64,000 bases of DNA from IMGVR_UViG_3300042558_003926:62001-126000, one strand, 5' to 3'. Shown: positions 3,966-33,000, numbered from the stretch's first letter. Numbers and translations are program-made. The notes: generated from the letters alone by a model not told the origin.

Positions 3966-4667
3966 ATGGATAGCGAAAAGAGTTACCTCGGAAAAATAGT
4001 AGACATAAAAGATCCTCTTTACAGGGGAAGAGCCAAGATTACTGTCTTTGGAGTACTTGATGATATTCCAGTTGAGGATTTACCTTGGGCAGAGCAGATC
4101 TCTGGTCTCTCTTTCGGGGCAGATAGCGGGAGCGGTAACCTTTCTATACCTAGATTGGGATCTATAGTAGCCGTTCATTTTGAACAGAACAATTATTATA
4201 AAATGTACTTCCATTACCTTAAAGAGATTTCTCAGGATTTACTTGCTGAACTAAAGGAGGATAATTCTTACGATGGAACTCAATCTTTAGTTTATGATGG
4301 TGATGCACAACCTGGAACTCTTAAGTTAATATACACAAGGAAGAATGGCTTAGTATTTCAACTGGGAGACGCGACTATACAACTGGACACTCAAAATGGA
4401 GGAACTGATGCTGAAAAATTAAGGATAGTCCTCAAAATGAATGACGATGAGATAAGAATGGAAAAAAGCGGGGGTAAGCAAAAAGTTATCGTTAATTCAA
4501 GTAATATAGAATTAGGAGAAGCTGCCGTTGAAAAATTAGTTAAAGGTAATACATTCTTAACTCTATTTAATTCTCACACCCATCCAACTCCAGTGGGCCC
4601 ATCGGGAACACCAATTCCTACTATGGTTGATAACATTCACTTAAGTCAAGTTTCAAAAACTAAGTAA
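3966..4667 (+). CDS. Baseplate central spike (gp5/gpV-like OB fold, C-terminal HxH apex)
   Basis: YLGKIVDIKDPLYRGRAKITVFG...LPWA...IPRLGSIVAVHF OB-fold signature; C-terminal FNSHTHPT metal-binding tip motif; no lysozyme domain. Confidence 0.85.
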   Translation: MDSEKSYLGKIVDIKDPLYRGRAKITVFGVLDDIPVEDLPWAEQISGLSFGADSGSGNLSIPRLGSIVAVHFEQNNYYKMYFHYLKEISQDLLAELKEDNSYDGTQSLVYDGDAQPGTLKLIYTRKNGLVFQLGDATIQLDTQNGGTDAEKLRIVLKMNDDEIRMEKSGGKQKVIVNSSNIELGEAAVEKLVKGNTFLTLFNSHTHPTPVGPSGTPIPTMVDNIHLSQVSKTK

Positions 4668-4669
4668 TT

Positions 4670-6094
4670 ATGCCGGCTGACTGGAAAGGTTTTATAGATA
4701 GTTTCTCTGATTATTTAACATCTAAGGTAGAAAAAACACCGCAGAAAAATGCTGACAAGCTAATAGAGCTTTATTTAGATGCACTATCAAATAGAGCTAG
4801 ACCTTTGCCTGGAACTGCTCTATTTAACAAGAATGATCCTAAAGTAATTTCAGCCAAAGGAGCTTTAAAGGAGTCTTTTGGTAAAGCAATGGAGATGATG
4901 CTGAAAGACCCGGATCAGCAAAAATTATCATTCACTAATAAGAAGAAAGATAAATCTTTTTTTGATCCTGCCACTTTTGAAGCAGAACAATCTATACCTA
5001 CTGAGCCACCTTCTAGCTCAGACCCACTCCCTCAGATAGATCCTAAGTATTATGATGAGATTATAGCTAACTCTAGTCAGACTTTCTTTATTAAACAAAA
5101 GGATGGACCGAAGTCAAATAGGATCTTTGATTACAAAACCAGGGTCGATCTAACATTACCCGAGGGATATGGAATTCCTTTGTCCATATTCGGGAGTACT
5201 ATAGATGAGATTATATCAACTCTGAAAGCATACACATATCTACCCGGATTGCTTAAATTAATATCATACAGGAATTCCGGATATGATCTTGTACCCGATA
5301 TAAACAAAAAAGGAGTTGCTACTACATATGGCGAGCTAATTAGAGATTTTGTTAAATTGTATGCTAGAGGAGGTGACTATAGACAAATAGGTGACGCGTA
5401 CAGATCCGTAACAGGATCGAGTGATGAAAACCTTAGTGCTACCATAAATTCAGAGCTAGGCATCCTTATAAAGCTCTATGCTGACTATGAGCTAAAGACT
5501 TGGTTAGAGATAGCAAGACCTTACATAGAAAAAACAGCTAAGGATAAAGCAATAGCAGAAATAAAGAAATCCCAAAATATACCGGAATCTCAAAAGATAG
5601 AGGGTGAAGATGACGTAGTAAATCCGAATATAACCGATCAGTTAGCTACTATGATGATAGATTCAGAGAAGGATCCATATAGTATAATGGCAAGATCCCT
5701 AGTTTTATTTTGGACAATAGTAGGAACAGGAACAACGACTCTTTTTTCCGGAGCAACTGGAGTTCCGCCTTCTACTATAGCTATTCCTAATACATATCAA
5801 ATAGTTTTTCCTGGACTTCCTTTTATAGTTGCTAAGGGGTTTAAAAAGGCTTTTAATGTCGGGGTAAATCCTAAATTTATTCCGGAAATAACATTTTTAC
5901 AATATCAAATAAATCCCTCTGCTGCAATTAAAAAAATAGACGATGCGGGTAAGCTTTCAGCAAAAGCAACGTCCGCTGCTATAGCTGCTGTTTTTGCGAC
6001 TCATCTTCTTACTGTAAAATTTATTTACTTCGGACAGATACCTGCTGCACCTTCTCCTATCCCAGCTCCTTCCTTTGTTTTTGCAGTCTTTTAG
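4670..6094 (+). CDS. Hypothetical protein (probable baseplate/spike-associated)
   Basis: 474-aa ORF starting 2 nt after the spike gene; no recognised motif. Confidence 0.6.
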   Translation: MPADWKGFIDSFSDYLTSKVEKTPQKNADKLIELYLDALSNRARPLPGTALFNKNDPKVISAKGALKESFGKAMEMMLKDPDQQKLSFTNKKKDKSFFDPATFEAEQSIPTEPPSSSDPLPQIDPKYYDEIIANSSQTFFIKQKDGPKSNRIFDYKTRVDLTLPEGYGIPLSIFGSTIDEIISTLKAYTYLPGLLKLISYRNSGYDLVPDINKKGVATTYGELIRDFVKLYARGGDYRQIGDAYRSVTGSSDENLSATINSELGILIKLYADYELKTWLEIARPYIEKTAKDKAIAEIKKSQNIPESQKIEGEDDVVNPNITDQLATMMIDSEKDPYSIMARSLVLFWTIVGTGTTTLFSGATGVPPSTIAIPNTYQIVFPGLPFIVAKGFKKAFNVGVNPKFIPEITFLQYQINPSAAIKKIDDAGKLSAKATSAAIAAVFATHLLTVKFIYFGQIPAAPSPIPAPSFVFAVF

Positions 6095-6119
6095 AAATAT
6101 TTCTAGGAGTACTTTTAAA

Positions 6120-6148
6120 GGAACTTAATGATGGATATATAGTATAAT
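6120..6148 (+). promoter_or_regulatory. Putative middle promoter GGAAC-N18-TATAAT with nested late motif GATATATA (6134-6141)
   Basis: Same spacing as copies at 45253, 54016 and 60867. Confidence 0.6.
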
Positions 6149-6185
6149 TAACAGTATTTTTAATCACTTATAAACTAAAAAAAAT

Positions 6186-7346
6186 ATGAATTTTCCAAAT
6201 TCTGAAGAATTCGACTGGAACGTTTCCGGTAAATTTAAACCTAATGCTAGAATCAAAGCCCTAGATGGATCCAAAGTGTATTGTCATGAGCCTTACGCTG
6301 AGGAATTATATAAGAAATACGAATCAACCTATCACATGCTAGATGGCGGATCTAAGGACCTAGTTGAAGGATCGGTTTATAAATGTAAAGTCATGGACGT
6401 GTATTCTGACAAGGTACTTGCTCAGACTGGTTCAGGACAAACAATTTACATAGACCTTAAGAAGGAATTAAAAGATGCTATCAAATTAGGTATTGATGGC
6501 ATTACATTTAACATCGGTGAGGATGTTAATGCAAGAGTTAAAAAAGTCAACGGAGGTTTTAATGGATCCGTTGTTGAATATTACATCCACACGCTTCGAG
6601 CTGAATTATTTGACCAGATTAAGAAAGAAAGCAGTGCCTATCTTGTTAAGGTGGTTAGCGTAAATAAAGGAGGTTATATAGCCGATCTATCTGGAATTAA
6701 GTGTTTCCTACCAGGATCTCTTGCAGCAGCTAACAAGATAACAGATTTTGAATCCTATATTGGTAAGACACTTCACGTAATGATTGAAGGTTATGTCCCA
6801 GCTAAGGATATCTTCATTGTATCATATAAGAAGTATCTAAATAAGATAATGGATTCAAAGATCCAAGAGCTTGATCTGACTAAAAAATATAAAGGATATG
6901 TTACTGGTACATCTGACTTTGGTGTATTCGTTGAATGGGATAGCGTTTATACTGGACTTATCCATAAGACCGAGTTCCAAGACGAAAGCTATCTTTCCGA
7001 TCTTACTCCTGGTAGCGAGGTAGAATTCTACGTTAAGGAGATAAAGGAAAATAATAGATTAACTCTTACCCTGGATAAACCATTGGAAAGAAATATAATT
7101 CTACAGGATCTTGAAAATAGAATTAAAGAGGGAACATCTGATATCTATGAATCTAAAGTTAAGCATAAAAGAAAAAATGGTGCTTTAGTTGAAATAGAAT
7201 CTCTAGGTCTTATGGCTTTGGTTCCACAGGACAGATTAGGAAAAAAATCAGGAGCTGTTAAACCCGGTGATATATTGACCGTGACTCCGTACGAGGTTGA
7301 TCCTCTATCTGGAAAAATATTTGTTCAACTAGTAGATGTCGGATAA
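6186..7346 (+). CDS. rpsA: Ribosomal protein S1-like protein (about 4 S1/OB domains)
   Basis: S1 repeats: VVSVNKGGYIADLSGIKCFLPGS, YKGYVTGTSDFGVFVEWD..YTGLIHKTE, VKPGD.LTV; N-terminal EEFDW as in Bacteroidota bS1. Confidence 0.85.
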   Translation: MNFPNSEEFDWNVSGKFKPNARIKALDGSKVYCHEPYAEELYKKYESTYHMLDGGSKDLVEGSVYKCKVMDVYSDKVLAQTGSGQTIYIDLKKELKDAIKLGIDGITFNIGEDVNARVKKVNGGFNGSVVEYYIHTLRAELFDQIKKESSAYLVKVVSVNKGGYIADLSGIKCFLPGSLAAANKITDFESYIGKTLHVMIEGYVPAKDIFIVSYKKYLNKIMDSKIQELDLTKKYKGYVTGTSDFGVFVEWDSVYTGLIHKTEFQDESYLSDLTPGSEVEFYVKEIKENNRLTLTLDKPLERNIILQDLENRIKEGTSDIYESKVKHKRKNGALVEIESLGLMALVPQDRLGKKSGAVKPGDILTVTPYEVDPLSGKIFVQLVDVG

Positions 7347-8742
7347 TAGAACACAGGTTGATAAACTGCATGCTCTTAGTTCTTCTGTTATAGGATTTGA
7401 GTTTGAGTTCTACACCAATCTTTTAAAAGGTAGGGCAGCAGAATCTTTATCTAAGCTTTTAAAGAAAAAAGTAGAGGTATCTGAAAAATACCATTCGAAT
7501 ATTCCGGTTGATGCTAACAATTTTAAGCTAGAACCGGATTATTCAGGTGGGAGTAAAATGATGGAGTTTATTACCGGTCCTTTGCCATATAACGAGGCAA
7601 TTACCATACTGATAAAGACTCTAAAATGGATAGATGAGAATGGATGGACCACCGATAGGTGTGCTTTCCAATTCTCCGTTAGTTTCGATAAGTTCAGAAG
7701 AGACGTTAAAGACAGAATGGAGAATCTCGATAAGCTTAAGTTTATATTAGGTTTGGATGAGCCATTCATATATTCTAAATTTGGTAATAGGGAAAGAAAC
7801 GTATATGCAAAATCTATAAAGAGAGTAGTTCCAATCAATAGATTTTCTATACTAGAGAATATAAGCACAATAGATCCTAAGATGTACAAAGTTCCTAACG
7901 ATAAGTACTACGGGGTTAATTTCACAAAGATTCCTCAGGGATATTTGGAATTTAGATATCTTGGAAATCGTGATTATCAGAAGAAAAGTAAGGACATTAG
8001 AGAAATCATCGACTATATTATCCTCTATCTTTATGATTTATTGAGTCATAGAATATCCGGATACAATAAGGAAGATTTAGCATCATTACAGAAGATGATG
8101 TCCAAATACTCTAAAGTTGTTAGATCCTTTAGTAATCCTGATTTTTTCTTTAAGGCATTCCCAGATTTTCACGTATTTATAGATCTTAAGGGATTTGATG
8201 AAAATGTTAAAACTTATTTTCCGGTAATAAGGGATAAGATATTCGATTTAATAGTTGAAGGAAATATAACTTCGTGTTATTTTAATTATGATACTACAAC
8301 TGGAAGATATCAAATAAAGGAAGCTAGATGTAGAAATTCATTTGAGTTATCCAATTTGGATCTGATCCTTTGTGATATAAAAAATGCGGTTATTAAAAAT
8401 TGTAATATCTACAATTGTGAGATTAAAAAATCATCTTTGGAGGATTCTTATATCTACAGTGGAACTAAAGTCATATCATCTAAGGTAAAATCTACGATAG
8501 TTGATTTTTCCAACGAACTTAAGGATTGCTTTATAGACTGCGAGGGGAAGAACATTAATTGTAAAATAATCGGTGGTGTTTTAAGAGCTGGTAATATTGG
8601 GGAGAATTCCGATATAAGCAAGGAAACAATGAAAGTTAAAAATCCGGCAGATCAGAGACTTGCTAGATTCGTTACGGATAAAAGATTAAAGGATCTCAAC
8701 GATAGATATAATAATCCGAAGTTCGGTAATATGAACTATTAA
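7336..8742 (+). CDS. Putative amidoligase-family (COOH-NH2 ligase) protein with C-terminal beta-helix
   Basis: GFEFEF, LEPDYS, MEFITGPL, KYYGVN and YLEFR motifs; C-terminal ILCDIKNAVIKNCNIYNCEIKKSSL pentapeptide-like repeats; overlaps the S1 gene by 11 nt. Confidence 0.65.
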   Translation: MSDNRTQVDKLHALSSSVIGFEFEFYTNLLKGRAAESLSKLLKKKVEVSEKYHSNIPVDANNFKLEPDYSGGSKMMEFITGPLPYNEAITILIKTLKWIDENGWTTDRCAFQFSVSFDKFRRDVKDRMENLDKLKFILGLDEPFIYSKFGNRERNVYAKSIKRVVPINRFSILENISTIDPKMYKVPNDKYYGVNFTKIPQGYLEFRYLGNRDYQKKSKDIREIIDYIILYLYDLLSHRISGYNKEDLASLQKMMSKYSKVVRSFSNPDFFFKAFPDFHVFIDLKGFDENVKTYFPVIRDKIFDLIVEGNITSCYFNYDTTTGRYQIKEARCRNSFELSNLDLILCDIKNAVIKNCNIYNCEIKKSSLEDSYIYSGTKVISSKVKSTIVDFSNELKDCFIDCEGKNINCKIIGGVLRAGNIGENSDISKETMKVKNPADQRLARFVTDKRLKDLNDRYNNPKFGNMNY

Positions 8743-8756
8743 AAAAATCTACTCAG

Positions 8757-9533
8757 ATGACCCAAGAAGAATTAGTACAGGAAATACAAGACGCTCTTTC
8801 TTTTAGTTGTGCTTTACCGTATCAGCTTAACGTGCAGGAAATTGAAAGAATTATAAACAGAGCCAAGGCTTGGTTTTATGATAATTACCAATATGCTGCA
8901 GAGGAAAGAGTTTTTGTTCTTTCGAATTCTTTATTTCAACACCCTGAGTTTAAAAGAACTAGACAGATCCAACTTCCTAAAGCCATAGTGGCTGTTTATG
9001 AAGTTAGAGAACTAGGTGGTTCTGGGATATCCGGAAACCCAGACAGGGATTTCAGCGATTCCAAGTTGCTTGGATCTGAACTCCTATTATCTCCATTTGT
9101 TGGAGATAATCTTGTTTATAGAACGGTAATGTATTCATACTTCGATTTAGCTAAGGCCTATCTATTGAATACCTATGCCTTTAAATATAATAAAAATACA
9201 AAATTCTTAACCATATTAGGTAGAGATCCAAATAGATCCGGAAAGGGACAATTAGCTCAAGGATTTGGAGTTGGTGGTATAGACGTTTCTGTTAGATGCT
9301 TCGTTGCAATACCGGATGAATATCTATATGACGATGAATTATTCGTAAGATACTGTATAGCTAAATGTAAAATAGCTCTTTCCCAAATGCTGGGCGTATT
9401 TTCTTATAATCTTCCGGGGGGAGTCCAGATTAATGCTGGAGAAATCGGAACTCAGGGAGCAACTGAACTCCAGGAAGTTATGGATATGATCAACGGAGAG
9501 AATACTCCTTCATATTTCTTGCAGTGGAACTAA
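8757..9533 (+). CDS. Neck protein (T4 gp13-like)
   Basis: C-terminal RYCIAKCKI...NLPGGVQINAGEI...G..EL signature of gp13-like proteins. Confidence 0.8.
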   Translation: MTQEELVQEIQDALSFSCALPYQLNVQEIERIINRAKAWFYDNYQYAAEERVFVLSNSLFQHPEFKRTRQIQLPKAIVAVYEVRELGGSGISGNPDRDFSDSKLLGSELLLSPFVGDNLVYRTVMYSYFDLAKAYLLNTYAFKYNKNTKFLTILGRDPNRSGKGQLAQGFGVGGIDVSVRCFVAIPDEYLYDDELFVRYCIAKCKIALSQMLGVFSYNLPGGVQINAGEIGTQGATELQEVMDMINGENTPSYFLQWN

Positions 9534-9537
9534 TCTC

Positions 9538-9566
9538 GATATATACATGGAAACACTTTTTCCATG
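9538..9566 (+). promoter_or_regulatory. Late promoter motif GATATATA followed by a hairpin (CATGGAAA/TTTCCATG) covering the gp25 start codon
   Basis: Motif at 9538-9545; inverted repeat at 9546-9553 / 9559-9566. Confidence 0.55.
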
Positions 9567-9935
9567 AGAGAGATTTATAATAGAGACCCCGAGGATCCGG
9601 AGTACAATCCTTATCAGTTAGAAACAACAGATCCTGTTGAAATCTGCATAGGTCAGATTAAAATGCTCTTGCTCACAAATAAGGGTGAAGTTCTAGGTGA
9701 TCCAAAATTTGGATTGAATATGGAGGATCTTGTTTTTAATCTAAATCTTTCTGAATCGAGTATTAAAAAAGAGATTGATTTATACCTTAATGTATATGTT
9801 CCTCTATTCAGAACTCTAGGCGGATCATATGAACTTAAATTTTTCGTTGGTAAGCTAAGAGATATTGCTACCCTTGATTTTAAATTACCTCAAAATGGGG
9901 GACTTAGTCCCGCAGTTACACTAAGATTAACATAA
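9564..9935 (+). CDS. Baseplate wedge gp25-like (GPW/gp25)
   Basis: QIKMLLLTNKGEVLGDPKFGLNMEDLVF matches the gp25 motif LLT..GE....P.FG. Confidence 0.85.
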   Translation: MREIYNRDPEDPEYNPYQLETTDPVEICIGQIKMLLLTNKGEVLGDPKFGLNMEDLVFNLNLSESSIKKEIDLYLNVYVPLFRTLGGSYELKFFVGKLRDIATLDFKLPQNGGLSPAVTLRLT

Positions 9936-30046: not shown

Positions 30047-33000
30047 ATGTCCGGAGCTAAACTTTTTGATTTTAACTCTTCTTTTTCTGTAACTAGAACA
30101 AATCCGAGACTGACTGGGAATTTTAAAATAACCCTGGATTCAGCTGGAAATATTGCATTCAATTCAATGAATGCTAACGGTATATTAAGTAATGACAGAT
30201 ATAAGAAATTTAATATAACAGGGCAAAATACCTTTGCCCAGGACATATACCAGTATTTTAACGAGGGAAATCTTTCTAACGAAATAGTTTTTCAAATCGG
30301 TAGATTTACGAACGGGCAAGCTCAGGCAGCTACGAAATTTGATGAACAGTATGATTTCTTTTATGCGAGCGGGGCTTCTGCTTTACCAGATAAAAATTAC
30401 TCCGAGAGTTTTAGCTACTTTGCCCCTCTCTGGATAAAAAACGAAATACCAGATTACTTTGTAATATTAAAGGTTCCTGGACCTATGAACTACCCATATT
30501 CAACCAATCAGACTTCTATATCTCCTGGAGTTAAATATAAGGTAGTCCAAAACTATACAAGCAGTACTGATTTTACTATATCATATGGAGTAGATCAATC
30601 AGGTAATCCTGTAGAATATGCGGATGGTGATATCTTTACTGGGACAAATCAGGCAACATCATATAGCATTCTTGGAGGCACTGGATCGGTTGTTATTTTT
30701 AGTGAACTAGCTAATCTAAATTTTGTTAATGACGTAGAGACAACATTTAAGGAAAAAATACTTCCTAATTGTTCGGTAGTTCAGACTTATGACTTATCTG
30801 AAAATAGCAGGATTGGAAAATACATCAGAAAGATATTTAATGACCCTAATTTTTCCAATTCTCCTATAGAGATAAGTTGGGGACCTAATTCATATAGCTA
30901 TTATAGGGGGATTTCCGTTGCTGATGGAGTTTTTACTAAAAAGGGAGAGATACTTTCCCCATACCTTTCTAAGGATGATTCGGATTCTATGATAGACTTT
31001 GAATCCTATATTACTAATGGATTTTACAGAAATAATATTATATGCCCAAATCTTTTAAATCTTGAGTTTGCCTTTAATGATTTAGATTCAGATGAGTATA
31101 CCATTAATAGGTATATGGGATTTTATGTTTCAAGAAACGATATAGCAAGCCTCAGATTAAACGGAGATTTCTTTTATGAGTATCGAGATCTTAGCGGAAA
31201 TAATGATTTACCTAAGCCAACGAGAAATGCCTTCGGTTATTACTACGATACAACATCATACGGGGTAACCTCAGATAGTGGAATAAGACTATTTTATGAG
31301 AACGCATCTGGGTTTGTTCCTGGATCCAATGACGTAAATTTATATGATCCGAGTAAGCTTTATTATCTAACCGATAAGAATTCTAATTTCTATAGTCTTA
31401 AAAGAGACGAGGGATACACTAGTCCTGGTGGAAATTCGCCGGATTATAGCTATGGTCCTTTTGATTATACGACTGGACAATTCTCAGCAACTGGATCAAC
31501 GGGTGCAACTGCTGGATCATTAGTTATTCAGAATAAGAAAACAGACCTATTAAATTTTACCGGAATTAGTGATAAAGTTGCAAGCATACCCGGATCTATT
31601 CCCACTGTCCCTGGCAGATCTTCTTTAGAGGTTGAATTTCTAAAATCTTATGATTTATCTGGACAGATAACATTTAAAATATACTGGCCTAATGGATACT
31701 ATAAGGAAGGACCAAGAAGATATGATATAGCTCAATCTACGGATCTTTCTTCGATTATACAATGGATAGATGGGTCATATTACAGTAGCGGAAATACACA
31801 CTTTTTTAATGCAGTTGCTTCGGAAACATCATCTATTGCATTATCTCTTTCCAATTTAGCAGATGCAATCAATTCTGCAACATGGGATGCTGGAACTAAT
31901 CTATCGTCTGCTGTCATTAGACTTAAGGATTATGGAACATACGGTAATACATCATACAGCGTTAGTGTTTTTGATAATTACTCTTACTTCGAATCAAACT
32001 TCCAGAAAGAATGGAATAATACATCAGCATATTCTATAGATGGTATAGTTATCTACAATGGATACTATTATCAAGCAAACACGGCAGTTTCCGTTCCTTC
32101 TCCTGGCAATTTTAACGATTCCCCTGATGTATCCAACGATTGGGATAATTATATCACTTTTTCCAACTCGGGATATCTTAAGATTAACGGACAGGACGCA
32201 TCAACTATAAATGGTCTGGTTTATTTTGAAGGCGGAACTAGTTTACCTAATAATAGAATTCTATTCCCTTCAACTTATGAAGGGTTTGTTAGTGAGGGTG
32301 ATTTTGTTTTAACTAAGACCGGTAAAACTAAAATCTCCAGCATTAGCAAATATGTCGATGATCCAATAATAGACGCTGACACCAAAAAGATTACTGGGTT
32401 TAATAATTATTCATACCTTAGAGTTGCTGTTCTGGAGGATGAAGATTCTATAGTAGATCTTGGGTCCGATAAGTCTTTTAACGTTTATAAATCCTCTATT
32501 TTATATTTGGGAGTGTTTAGTTTTTTTGATACTAAGGAATTTGATTTTGATTTTCTTAGTTCAAATTATGGATACACTCCAACATCCGAGACCTATAAAT
32601 ACTTCCAAATCCAACCGGGAGCATCGGGGTCAATACTACCTAATATACCCTATATAATAAAGCAGGGGCAAATATCATACGCTAATTCCCTTTATTCGCA
32701 AGGGAGTATTTTCTATGGCGCTACTGGATATGGATTCTTTGATAATGCAAATCCTAACCAAAATGACCCGGTTGTTGTGTTCCCCGCGGAATATTCAAAG
32801 ATAGCATATAGTTCTATCCCAACTACATATTCTACAATCGACTATAACGACGATTTAAACGCATTTAATGGATTTATTGGAATACAAGGGATAGATACTA
32901 ATCCACTTCCAAGTACGGCAACTAAGATACAGGTATTCAATAAGGGAAAATTAAATACCGAATATGAATATCTTAATGAAAACTATACGCCCACTAGGGC

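What the first reader, a model, noticed from the sequence alone, without database searches (positions are those of the whole stretch)
6120..7346. Phage-encoded ribosomal protein S1 homolog inside the baseplate/neck cluster with nested middle and late promoters
Seen: a 386-aa protein with about four S1 domains sits between the spike and neck genes. Its upstream region has both GGAAC-N18-TATAAT and GATATATA. Phage leaders here are A-rich and mostly lack Shine-Dalgarno sequences. Known: bS1 recruits A/U-rich leaders, Bacteroidota largely do not use SD pairing, and S1 genes are reported in only a minority of huge phages. Inference: a shortened S1 that reprogrammes host ribosomes toward phage mRNAs throughout middle and late infection.
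Basis: partly seen in the sequence, partly recalled or inferred. Interest (0 to 1): 0.62.

Follow-up and report, generated by a model that had tools for sequence, protein, structure and literature searches.

The report
Phage-encoded short ribosomal protein S1
A 290-kb lake-water phage carries a shortened, strongly diverged copy of bacterial ribosomal protein S1 that keeps the parts used to dock on the ribosome; such genes have already been reported in huge phages and are thought to steer host ribosomes toward phage messages, but this has not been tested.

Summary
The ORF is real: window 6186-7346, + strand, 386 aa. It is a true derivative of ribosomal protein bS1, not just an S1-domain protein. 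It aligns collinearly with bS1 domains D1-D4, and the model shows four OB folds. E. coli bS1 on the 30S subunit is the best structural match. It has an N-terminal helix at the position of the uS2-anchoring helix, and a complex model with a Bacteroidota uS2 passes (0.75 against 0.00 for controls). It is not an orthologue: it scores far below the rpsA cut-offs, only D3 passes Pfam S1, and D5-D6 are absent. It belongs to a family of at least 750 proteins in huge phages, including Prevotella Lak phages. Within this clade it is as conserved as the neighbouring baseplate genes. Leaders are A-rich and lack Shine-Dalgarno sequences. GATATATA is a real, recurrent promoter-like motif and is conserved upstream of this gene in six relatives. 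GGAAC-N18-TATAAT is not a recurrent class, so "nested middle and late promoters" is unsupported. Huge-phage rpS1 and its link to SD-less genomes were published in 2020, so this is a new member of a known kind. Ribosome binding and mRNA reprogramming remain inferences.

The parts
6134..6142 (+). GATATATAG promoter-like motif, 44 nt before the ATG
   Evidence: It is one of 58 genome sites, of which 47 lie within 100 nt upstream of a same-strand start. GATATATA[G/C] is present at -33 to -52 upstream of the orthologue in all six relatives checked.
6120..6148 (+). GGAAC-N18-TATAAT string; not supported as a separate promoter class
   Evidence: There are only 2 exact sites and 4 with N17-19 in the whole genome. 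It is conserved in the close subclade (L005, L006, L008) but absent in L002, L004 and L009.
6186..7346 (+). CDS of the 386-aa bS1-derived protein (P0121)
6210..6218 (+). F-D-W motif (aa 9-11; W11 is invariant in the family)
   Evidence: The same [FYI][DN]W motif stands at a fixed distance before D2 in 30/30 bS1 of one Bacteroidota order. It is found in 0/30 other Bacteroidota and 0/15 CPR sequences.
6234..6284 (+). Phage-specific beta-hairpin (aa 17-33), partly an 11-residue insertion relative to bacterial bS1
   Evidence: Model and alignment. Residues 29-33 are predicted to touch uS2 residues 33-36.
6294..6332 (+). N-terminal helix (aa 37-49, YAEELYKKYESTY), the counterpart of the uS2-anchoring helix of bS1
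   Evidence: E. coli reference PMC4288201
6369..6575 (+). Domain D1 (aa 62-130), a degenerate OB fold with an inserted helix at 91-101
6633..6830 (+). Domain D2 (aa 150-215), the most conserved block (NKGGY..G.KCF.PGSLAAAN)
6879..7076 (+). Domain D3 (aa 232-297), the one canonical RNA-binding S1 domain (F245, F248 and H260 invariant)
7140..7337 (+). Domain D4 (aa 319-384), an OB fold that scores below the S1 threshold and is absent in the Lak-phage homologue
7336..8742 (+). 468-aa partner gene overlapping by 11 nt (weak N-terminal Amidoligase_2 match; C-terminal beta-helix)
   Evidence: The gene pair is conserved in L002, L005 and L009.

Best explanation
The gene encodes a phage-specific paralogue of ribosomal protein bS1.

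It keeps the ribosome-anchoring half of bS1: the N-terminal helix plus D1-D2. It keeps one canonical RNA-binding S1 domain (D3) and a degenerate fourth OB fold. It lacks D5-D6.

The likely mechanism has four steps:
1. The gene is transcribed from the phage's own GATATATA-type promoter, together with many other phage genes, including the surrounding baseplate and neck genes.
2. The protein docks on uS2 of the host 30S subunit at the site normally held by host bS1, which binds loosely and can exchange.
3. An added N-terminal hairpin enlarges the contact.
4. Its reduced RNA-binding arm then changes which leaders are captured, favouring the short, A-rich, SD-less phage leaders.

What is shown: homology, domain layout, family conservation, motif recurrence and leader composition. 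What is predicted in silico: docking on uS2. What is inferred: displacement of host bS1 and selectivity for phage mRNA.
For: Homology:
- rpsA models align collinearly over aa ~50-365, with E from 1e-23 to 4e-26.
- E. coli bS1 aa 58-259 aligns to query aa 104-296.
- Foldseek's best hit is bS1 on the 30S subunit (9gut_B, E 6e-23). The D1-D2 pair gives TMt 0.74.

N-terminus:
- The helix and the FDW motif align with bS1 of one Bacteroidota order (hhalign P 0.0023, against 0.1 for other Bacteroidota).

Docking:
- ipSAE is 0.75 and the best of 3 controls is 0.00. That mark was reached by 58 of 80 solved complexes and 2 of 110 mismatched pairs.
- The runs agree in at least 87% of contacts, and partner pLDDT is at least 79.
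- uS2 F34, H17-H20 and N205/D207/K210 are the equivalents of E. coli S2 F32, H15-H18 and N203/D205/R208, which form the known S1 site (PMC4288201).

Selection:
- At least 750 relatives were found.
- Identity to orthologues is 58% and 70%, within the range of adjacent core structural genes (46-82%).

Context:
- SD-less, A-rich leaders.
- The genome has no bS21 and no other S1-domain gene.
- In Lak-C1 the homologue sits beside Thg1-like, DnaB-like helicase and RNA ligase genes.
- Small contigs of the gene occur in a freshwater RNA library.

The same idea was proposed for huge-phage rpS1 (PMC7162821). Late expression of phage bS21 inside a structural cluster gives a parallel (PMC9723584).
Against: - There is no experimental evidence of ribosome association.
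- The complex pass may reflect the model's memory of solved bS1-uS2 complexes. It shows likeness, not that this copy binds.
- The equivalents of E. coli S1 Asp39 and Lys43, the salt-bridge residues, are Q80 and G84 here.
- Only one domain is a canonical RNA binder, so the protein might bind mRNA poorly.
- Scores are 81-92 bits against rpsA cut-offs of 368-918.
- The host is not identified, and the uS2 used came from a candidate order only.
- The RNA-library contigs could be carried-over DNA.
Confidence: 0.5

Rival explanations
1. Host shut-off by occupancy. The protein docks on uS2 and blocks host bS1, but does not itself recruit mRNA. Host messages that depend on bS1 would then lose out. Phage messages with very short or no leaders would be translated without bS1 help.
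For: - The anchor module is predicted to bind uS2.
- Only one canonical RNA-binding domain remains, and D5-D6 are missing.
- 11 GATATATA sites lie only 4-7 nt before an ATG, which suggests leaderless-like transcripts. Another 24 lie 15-30 nt before an ATG.
Against: - The RNA-binding residues of D3 (F245, F248, H260) are invariant in the family, which argues that RNA binding matters.
- Transcription start sites are not mapped, so the leaderless status is a guess.
- Most phage genes have no promoter motif of their own and would sit inside polycistronic RNAs.
Confidence: 0.17
2. An off-ribosome RNA-binding cofactor. The protein would work like host S1 does for T4 RegB or Q-beta replicase. It would act as an RNA chaperone or specificity subunit for a phage RNA enzyme (nuclease, ligase or tRNA repair), for the phage tmRNA, or for mRNA turnover at the early-to-late switch.
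For: - S1 has documented extraribosomal roles with phage enzymes (summarised in PMC13157829 and PMC4288201).
- The Lak-C1 homologue lies beside Thg1-like and RNA ligase genes.
- The genome encodes a tmRNA, and bS1 is reported to influence trans-translation (reference list of PMC13157829).
- Al-Shayeb et al. left open a role 'on or off the ribosome' (PMC7162821).
Against: - The most conserved parts are the N-terminal helix, D1 and D2, which in bS1 serve protein docking rather than RNA binding.
- No partner enzyme is adjacent in this clade.
- The Q-beta replicase binds the same S1 surface, so the docking module alone cannot separate the two readings.
Confidence: 0.2
3. A virion-associated protein. 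It would be either a multi-OB structural part of the baseplate-neck region or a packaged protein that is ejected to act on ribosomes at the very start of infection.
For: - The gene sits inside the baseplate/neck cluster at a fixed position in relatives of 55-70% identity.
- It shares the GATATATA motif with neighbouring structural genes.
- It evolves at the same rate as those genes.
Against: - The Lak-C1 homologue is not in a structural cluster.
- All detectable similarity is to bS1, and no PHROG structural family matches.
- Phage bS21 also sits in a structural cluster without being structural (PMC9723584).
Confidence: 0.08

Closest known systems
Bacterial ribosomal protein bS1 (rpsA; six-domain form of E. 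coli and Bacteroidota)
   Same: - The order is collinear: N-terminal helix, then D1, D2, D3, D4.
- The D2 motif is very similar (KGG[FY]..L.GI..FLPGSL).
- D3 has the canonical S1 aromatic and His residues.
- The predicted contact is on the same uS2 surface.
   Different: - It has 386 aa and four domains, against 580-650 aa and six domains in Bacteroidota.
- It scores 81-92 bits against cut-offs of 368-918.
- It has extra N-terminal hairpin and D1 helix insertions.
- The equivalents of Asp39 and Lys43 are replaced.
- It sits on a very long stem branch in the tree.
Candidate rpS1 proteins of huge phages (Al-Shayeb et al. 2020, PMC7162821), including the Prevotella Lak megaphage homologue
   Same: - It belongs to the same protein family. 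It is 34-36% identical to Lak phages over aa 4-306, and it hits LR7565xx and LR745206 genomes.
- It shows the same association with genomes that lack SD sequences.
   Different: - The Lak protein has three domains (369 aa, no D4) and lies among RNA/DNA-metabolism genes.
- The published work did not establish that these are true bS1 derivatives, and it did not examine the N-terminal anchor.
Phage-encoded bS21 of freshwater Bacteroidetes phages (Chen et al. 2022, PMC9723584)
   Same: - A gene for a loosely bound 30S protein involved in initiation sits inside a conserved structural-gene region.
- The phages are large (up to 331 kb) and come from lakes.
- The proposed role is to substitute into host ribosomes.
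   Different: - It is a different protein at a different ribosomal site (the platform).
- This genome has no bS21.
- Late expression was shown for bS21 by metatranscriptomics. Here there are only four small contigs in one RNA library.
bS1 of Microcystis jumbo phage PhiMa05 (PMC13157829)
   Same: It is a phage-borne rpsA homologue.
   Different: The PhiMa05 copy groups with a specific bacterial lineage (Vampirovibrio-like) and looks recently acquired. The present family is an old, phage-specific lineage whose donor is unresolved.

Membership tests
bS1 / rpsA (equivalog level) | Score above the curated cut-off of an rpsA equivalog model | tested here: not met
   The best scores are NF004952 at 91.6 bits (cut-off 524) and TIGR00717 at 81 bits (cut-off 577).
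bS1 / rpsA (homology, domain order) | Collinear tandem S1/OB domains, with degenerate D1-D2 followed by canonical RNA-binding domains | tested here: met
   Alignment covers aa 50-365 against model positions 15-324. The model has four OB folds. bS1 chains are the top Foldseek hits. Per-domain Pfam scores are D1 none, D2 19.1, D3 32.5 and D4 16.2.
bS1 / rpsA | N-terminal helix that anchors the protein on uS2 (E. coli Phe5/Phe9 on S2 Phe32) | tested here: met
   Tested in silico only. Helix 37-49 aligns with the N-terminal helix of Bacteroidota bS1. In the complex model L41, Y42 and Y45 contact uS2 F34, and ipSAE is 0.75 against 0.00 for controls.
bS1 / rpsA | D1 salt bridges to the uS2 zinc pocket (E. 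coli Asp39, Lys43) | tested here: not met
   The aligned positions are Q80 and G84, conserved as such in the phage family. These contacts were of minor importance in E. coli (PMC4288201).
bS1 of Gram-negative / Bacteroidota type | Six domains, with three or more canonical RNA-binding domains (D3-D5) | tested here: not met
   There are four domains, and only one passes Pfam S1.
bS1 / rpsA | Physical presence on the 30S subunit and a role in initiation | not testable with these tools
   This needs biochemistry, and no cultured phage or host is available.
Huge-phage S1-like family (Lak and freshwater clade) | Length of about 370-400 aa, N-terminal W...KVY.HE.YA.EL motif, D2 block NKGG..D..G.K.F.PGS.AAAN | tested here: met
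   The 120 best relatives are 55-100% identical. The invariant columns are listed.
Sigma-70-type -35/-10 promoter (GGAAC-N18-TATAAT) as a 'middle' class | Recurrence upstream of several genes in the same genome | tested here: not met
   There are 2 exact and 4 relaxed sites in 289,651 bp. It is not conserved in the more distant orthologous regions.
GATATATA phage promoter-like class | Recurrent, strand-specific, at a fixed short distance upstream of starts, and conserved in orthologous positions | tested here: met
   47 of 58 sites lie within 100 nt upstream of a same-strand start, and the commonest spacing is 18-21 nt. It is conserved in six relatives. Timing and the polymerase or sigma factor are untested.

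The most novel reading that the evidence does not exclude
The family may be an old, vertically inherited 'ribosome-capture' module of Bacteroidota huge phages. A minimal bS1 has its uS2 anchor strengthened by a phage-specific beta-hairpin and an FDW motif that is otherwise found only in bS1 of one Bacteroidota order. It would out-compete the exchangeable host bS1 and create phage-specialised ribosomes in hosts that do not use SD pairing. It may act together with the translationally coupled amidoligase-like partner, for example through peptide-tag modification of a ribosomal component, in analogy to RimK acting on bS6.
Probability: 0.15. Interest if true: 0.75.

Novelty: new member of a known kind. 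Interest (0 to 1): 0.48.

Why it matters
Phage-encoded ribosomal proteins blur the line between viruses and cells. For S1 the published record says that true rpS1 cannot be told apart from generic S1-domain proteins. This case shows that at least one large phage family really is bS1-derived and keeps the anchoring elements. That turns a vague annotation into a concrete test: does a four-domain phage S1 replace host bS1 on Bacteroidota ribosomes and change leader selection? Bacteroidota initiate without SD pairing, so bS1-type mRNA capture should matter more there. That makes them a good system to ask how initiation specificity can be rewired.

Tried and rejected
- **Nucleotide search.** Megablast of 4 kb against 50,697 phage records found no match.
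- **PHROGs.** No family matched the S1-like protein.
- **N-terminus-only HMM.** An HMM of aa 1-62 was run against bacterial bS1. It hit the FDW site in 23 of 30 sequences of one order, but each hit alone was not significant (E 0.017-4). I therefore relied on motif counts and on profile-profile alignment.
- **Donor phylogeny.** The quick tree and the careful tree both place the phage clade outside the sampled Bacteroidota, on a very long stem. A tree that forces phage plus one order together is at least as likely (lnL +28 against the quick tree, p-AU 0.82). The donor is therefore unresolved. 13 of the 15 CPR sequences were left out of the tree because they lack the D2 anchor motif used for trimming.
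- **uS2 of the Saprospirales MAG (G002).** It was not found because the MAG is incomplete. uS2 of another genome of the same order (G045) was used instead.
- **bS21.** None was found in the genome.
- **Partner gene in Lak.** No homologue of the 468-aa neighbour was found in Lak-C1.
- **Fold of the 468-aa neighbour.** The model was poor (pLDDT 58.7, four sequences). Foldseek gave only weak pentapeptide-repeat-like hits (E 3e-3) and no amidoligase fold. The PDB sequence search was empty.
- **Reads.** The RNA run is held only as contigs, so it cannot show starts, strand or expression level.
- **Big representative-protein search.** I did not run it, because the word search and family scans had already settled the family.

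Full report
**The sequence and its setting.** The window is bases 62,001-126,000 of a single 289,651-bp IMG/VR virus record rated complete. Its G+C content is 37%. The ORF is at 6186-7346 on the + strand and encodes 386 aa.

Upstream lie a gp5-like hub OB protein (3966-4667; phrog_430, E 1e-13) and an unassigned 474-aa protein. Downstream lies a 468-aa gene that overlaps the S1-like gene by 11 nt. After it come a gp13-like neck protein, a gp25-like protein and a gp6-like wedge protein. The placement 'between spike and neck genes' is therefore correct. Near-identical DNA occurs in 19 lake-water metagenome runs from 19 studies, nine of them flagged as possible sources of this DNA.

**Is it an S1 homologue?** Yes, and more specifically a bS1 derivative.

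- Pfam detects only one S1 domain (aa 234-292, E 7e-15).
- Eleven NCBIfam rpsA models align collinearly from about aa 50 to 365 with model positions about 15-324, which correspond to D1 to D4.
- phmmer against PDB aligns aa 104-296 with E. coli bS1 aa 58-259.
- An AlphaFold2 model built on 31 family members (pLDDT 79, pTM 0.53) shows a hairpin (21-33), a helix (38-49) and four OB folds joined by helices.
- Foldseek's best matches are bS1 chains on the 30S subunit (9gut_B, E 6e-23). The D1-D2 pair superposes on ribosome-bound D1-D2 with TMt 0.74.
- Taken one by one, D1 gives no Pfam S1 hit, D2 scores 19.1 bits, D3 32.5 and D4 16.2, against a threshold of 22. Degenerate D1-D2 followed by a canonical D3 is also the pattern in bS1.

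It is not an orthologue. It scores 81-92 bits against cut-offs of 368-918. It has four domains rather than the six seen in the 580-650-aa Bacteroidota proteins sampled here.

**A large, conserved phage family.** The word search found 750 relatives. The best 120 are mostly about 385-397 aa (a few shorter, probably partial) and 55-100% identical. Many lie on contigs of 100-434 kb.

The gene order hub - variable gene - S1-like - 468-aa gene - gp13-like - gp25-like - gp6-like is the same in relatives at 70% identity (L005) and at 56-58% identity (L002). In L009 (55%) the S1-like gene is again followed directly by the 464-aa partner and a 258-aa gene. The S1-like protein is as conserved as the neighbouring core structural proteins: 58% and 70% identity against a range of 46-82%. 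It is therefore a vertically inherited core gene of this clade.

More distant members occur in Prevotella Lak megaphages (34-36% identity) and in the huge phages of Al-Shayeb et al.. The Lak-C1 protein has 369 aa, keeps the N-terminal module and D1-D3, and lacks D4. It lies next to Thg1-like, DnaB-like helicase and RNA-ligase genes, not baseplate genes. The position inside the structural cluster is thus a feature of this clade, not of the family. That argues against a structural role.

In E. coli the first 11 residues of S1 form a helix. Its Phe5 and Phe9 stack on S2 Phe32, and this contact is essential. The D1 residues Asp39 and Lys43 add minor salt bridges to the S2 zinc pocket (PMC4288201).

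I took bS1 from 30 Bacteroidota genomes and from 30 genomes of one order. That order holds a MAG titled 'uncultured Saprospirales bacterium', in which a 64-kb contig with a family member had been binned.

- The phage segment ...KVYCHEPYAEELYKKYESTY aligns with the bacterial ...Y....EL..LY..T helix that immediately precedes D1.
- The phage FDWNVSGK aligns with HDDFDWNVSKR of that order.
- The [FYI][DN]W motif stands 138-141 residues before the D2 FLPGS motif in 30/30 bS1 of that order. It is found in 0/30 other Bacteroidota and 0/15 CPR sequences. In 31/31 phage proteins it stands 164-169 residues before, the difference being due to insertions.
- Profile-profile alignment of the N-termini gives P 0.0023 for phage against that order, 0.1 against the other Bacteroidota and 0.89 against CPR.

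**Predicted docking on uS2.** A complex prediction used aa 1-150 with uS2 of a genome of that order (L092:1423-2181, - strand). It passed: ipSAE 0.75, 0.75 and 0.74, against a best of 0.00 in 3 controls. That mark was reached by 58 of 80 solved complexes and 2 of 110 mismatched pairs. The runs agree in at least 87% of contacts, and partner pLDDT is at least 79.

The contacts reproduce the known interface:

- uS2 F34 (E. coli F32) touches phage L41, Y42 and Y45.
- uS2 H17-H20 and N205/D207/K210 (E. coli H15-H18 and N203/D205/R208) touch D1 residues 84-86.
- The phage-specific strand 29-33 is predicted to pair with uS2 residues 33-36.

Three caveats apply. A bS1-uS2 complex has been solved, so the pass may come from the model's memory. 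It shows likeness, not that this copy binds. The equivalents of Asp39 and Lys43 are Q80 and G84 in the phage family.

**Origin.** In both the quick and the careful maximum-likelihood trees of D1-D4 the phage clade is monophyletic (100/100) on a very long stem. The tree held 16 phage, 59 Bacteroidota and 2 CPR sequences over 330 columns, and excluded the N-terminal motif. The sampled Bacteroidota form one side of a 99/96 branch.

A tree that forces phage plus the FDW-bearing order together is at least as likely (lnL 28 higher than the quick free tree, p-AU 0.82). The donor is therefore unresolved. The FDW motif points to that order, but Lak phages of Prevotella carry an FNW version too. The capture would then be old, and the motif is weak evidence for the present host.

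GATATATA:
- Its number is not raised (11 in the window against 7.5 in shuffles).
- All 11 window sites are on the coding strand ahead of ORFs.
- Genome-wide, 47 of 58 sites lie within 100 nt upstream of a same-strand start. 45 upstream regions contain it, against 1.1 expected from coding sequence.
- The spacing to the ATG clusters at 15-30 nt (24 sites) and at 4-7 nt (11 sites).
- GATATATA[G/C] stands 33-52 nt before the S1-like start in all six relatives examined.

It is a genuine phage promoter-like element. It also precedes a nucleotide pyrophosphohydrolase-like gene, and no timing data exist, so 'late' is unproven. The genome encodes three sigma-70 region-2 proteins that could read phage-specific promoters.

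GGAAC-N18-TATAAT:
- It occurs twice exactly, and four times with N17-19, in 290 kb.
- It is conserved only in the closer subclade.
- I do not accept it as a second class.

A clear second class does exist elsewhere in the genome (see the items noticed in passing).

Leaders are A-rich: 64-67% A at positions -12/-11 and about 9% G. GGAG occurs in only 8 of 358 upstream regions. This matches the SD-independent style described for Bacteroidia (PMC9976891).

**Expression.** One freshwater metatranscriptome, held only as contigs, has four pieces at 99% identity or more. One lies inside the S1-like gene (6449-6732), two lie in the 468-aa gene, and one lies at 9445-9600. This is compatible with transcription but does not prove it.

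**Mechanism and rivals.** The best reading (confidence about 0.5) is a minimal bS1 that docks on uS2 in place of the loosely bound host bS1 and changes leader selection in favour of phage mRNAs. It is made together with many GATATATA-driven genes.

The rivals are:
- occupancy-based host shut-off (0.17);
- an off-ribosome RNA cofactor for a phage enzyme or the phage tmRNA (0.2);
- a packaged or structural protein (0.08).

The docking module cannot by itself separate on-ribosome from off-ribosome roles, because the Q-beta replicase uses the same S1 surface (PMC4288201).

**Novelty.** Candidate rpS1 genes in huge phages, their link to genomes without SD sequences, and the hijacking hypothesis were published in 2020. 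That paper stated the caveat that true rpS1 is hard to confirm (PMC7162821). Mizuno et al. set S1-domain hits aside for the same reason (PMC6375957). A parallel case is phage bS21, which sits in a structural cluster and is expressed late in lake Bacteroidetes phages (PMC9723584).

This finding is a new member of that known kind. What this analysis adds:
- evidence that the family is truly bS1-derived;
- evidence that it retains, and extends, the uS2 anchor;
- evidence that it is a core gene of a large clade;
- a lineage-specific FDW motif shared with one bacterial order.

Noticed in passing
window 7336-8742 (+): A 468-aa gene overlaps the S1-like stop by 11 nt and is paired with it in L002, L005 and L009. 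It has a weak N-terminal Amidoligase_2 match (E 0.001, below threshold). Its ESM-Atlas clusters are all viral, and 12-17% of their members carry PF12224. The C-terminal part is a beta-helix resembling pentapeptide-repeat proteins (Foldseek E 3e-3; model pLDDT only 58.7). No homologue was found in Lak-C1. Its function and any link to the S1-like protein are unknown.
   Followed up: partly
outside the window: G000:C1 about 253,400-268,700 (+), also near 32,479, 38,889, 218,960, 244,801 and 250,976: At least 25 small genes are each preceded by a conserved cassette of about 75 nt: TTTTTTATCC(C/T)GGG - N~10 - TTAT(A/T)TTT(A/G) - N~6 - ATAACCAATTAAAAC - N~8 - ATG. The TAnnTTT(G/A) element resembles the Bacteroidota sigma-A -7 box (from my own knowledge). 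This looks like an early, host-polymerase promoter class with a conserved 5' leader AACCAAUUAAAA 12-13 nt before the AUG. It could be a translational signal.
   Followed up: partly
outside the window: e.g. G000:C1 179,366; 211,111; 215,330; 222,518; 241,539; 269,424; 287,121: Eleven GATATATA sites lie only 4-7 nt before an ATG. If transcription starts a few bases downstream of the motif, these mRNAs would be leaderless or nearly so. Start sites are not mapped.
   Followed up: no
outside the window: G000:C1:146,574-147,063 (+), locus L099 275-766: The phage encodes a tmRNA (Rfam RF00023, 85.5 bits against a gathering score of 47; ARAGORN tag peptide EEVELAVAA). It also has a single tRNA-Lys(ttt) at 168,811-168,882. 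bS1 is reported to interact functionally with tmRNA, so the two phage genes might work together.
   Followed up: partly
outside the window: G000:C1 20,290-20,496 (+), 27,795-27,974 (+), 280,319-280,531 (-): Three ORFs have sigma-70 region 2 (69, 44 and 27 bits). They are candidates for reading the GATATATA class. No bS21 gene and no second S1-domain gene were found in the genome.
   Followed up: no
window 4670-6094 (+): The gene between the hub and the S1-like gene is hypervariable. It has 474 aa here, 608 aa in L005 (29% identity over only 146 aa) and 888 aa in L002 (no BLAST match), while all flanking genes are 46-82% identical. It may be a spike-tip or host-recognition part.
   Followed up: no
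window 6095-6185 and the orthologous regions of L005, L006 and L008: A block of about 45 nt around the promoter motif (TTTAAAGGAACTnAAnGATGnGATATATAGTATAATTAAnAGTA) is nearly invariant between phages whose S1-like proteins are only about 70% identical. This suggests an extra regulatory site specific to this gene in that subclade.
   Followed up: partly
loci L008 (G001) and L009 (G002): Contigs carrying the phage family are binned into two GTDB species-representative MAGs. One is titled 'uncultured Saprospirales bacterium'. The other belongs to a small-genome (0.7-1.2 Mb, CPR-like) phylum; that contig is 3.8 kb and is probably mis-binned.
   Followed up: partly
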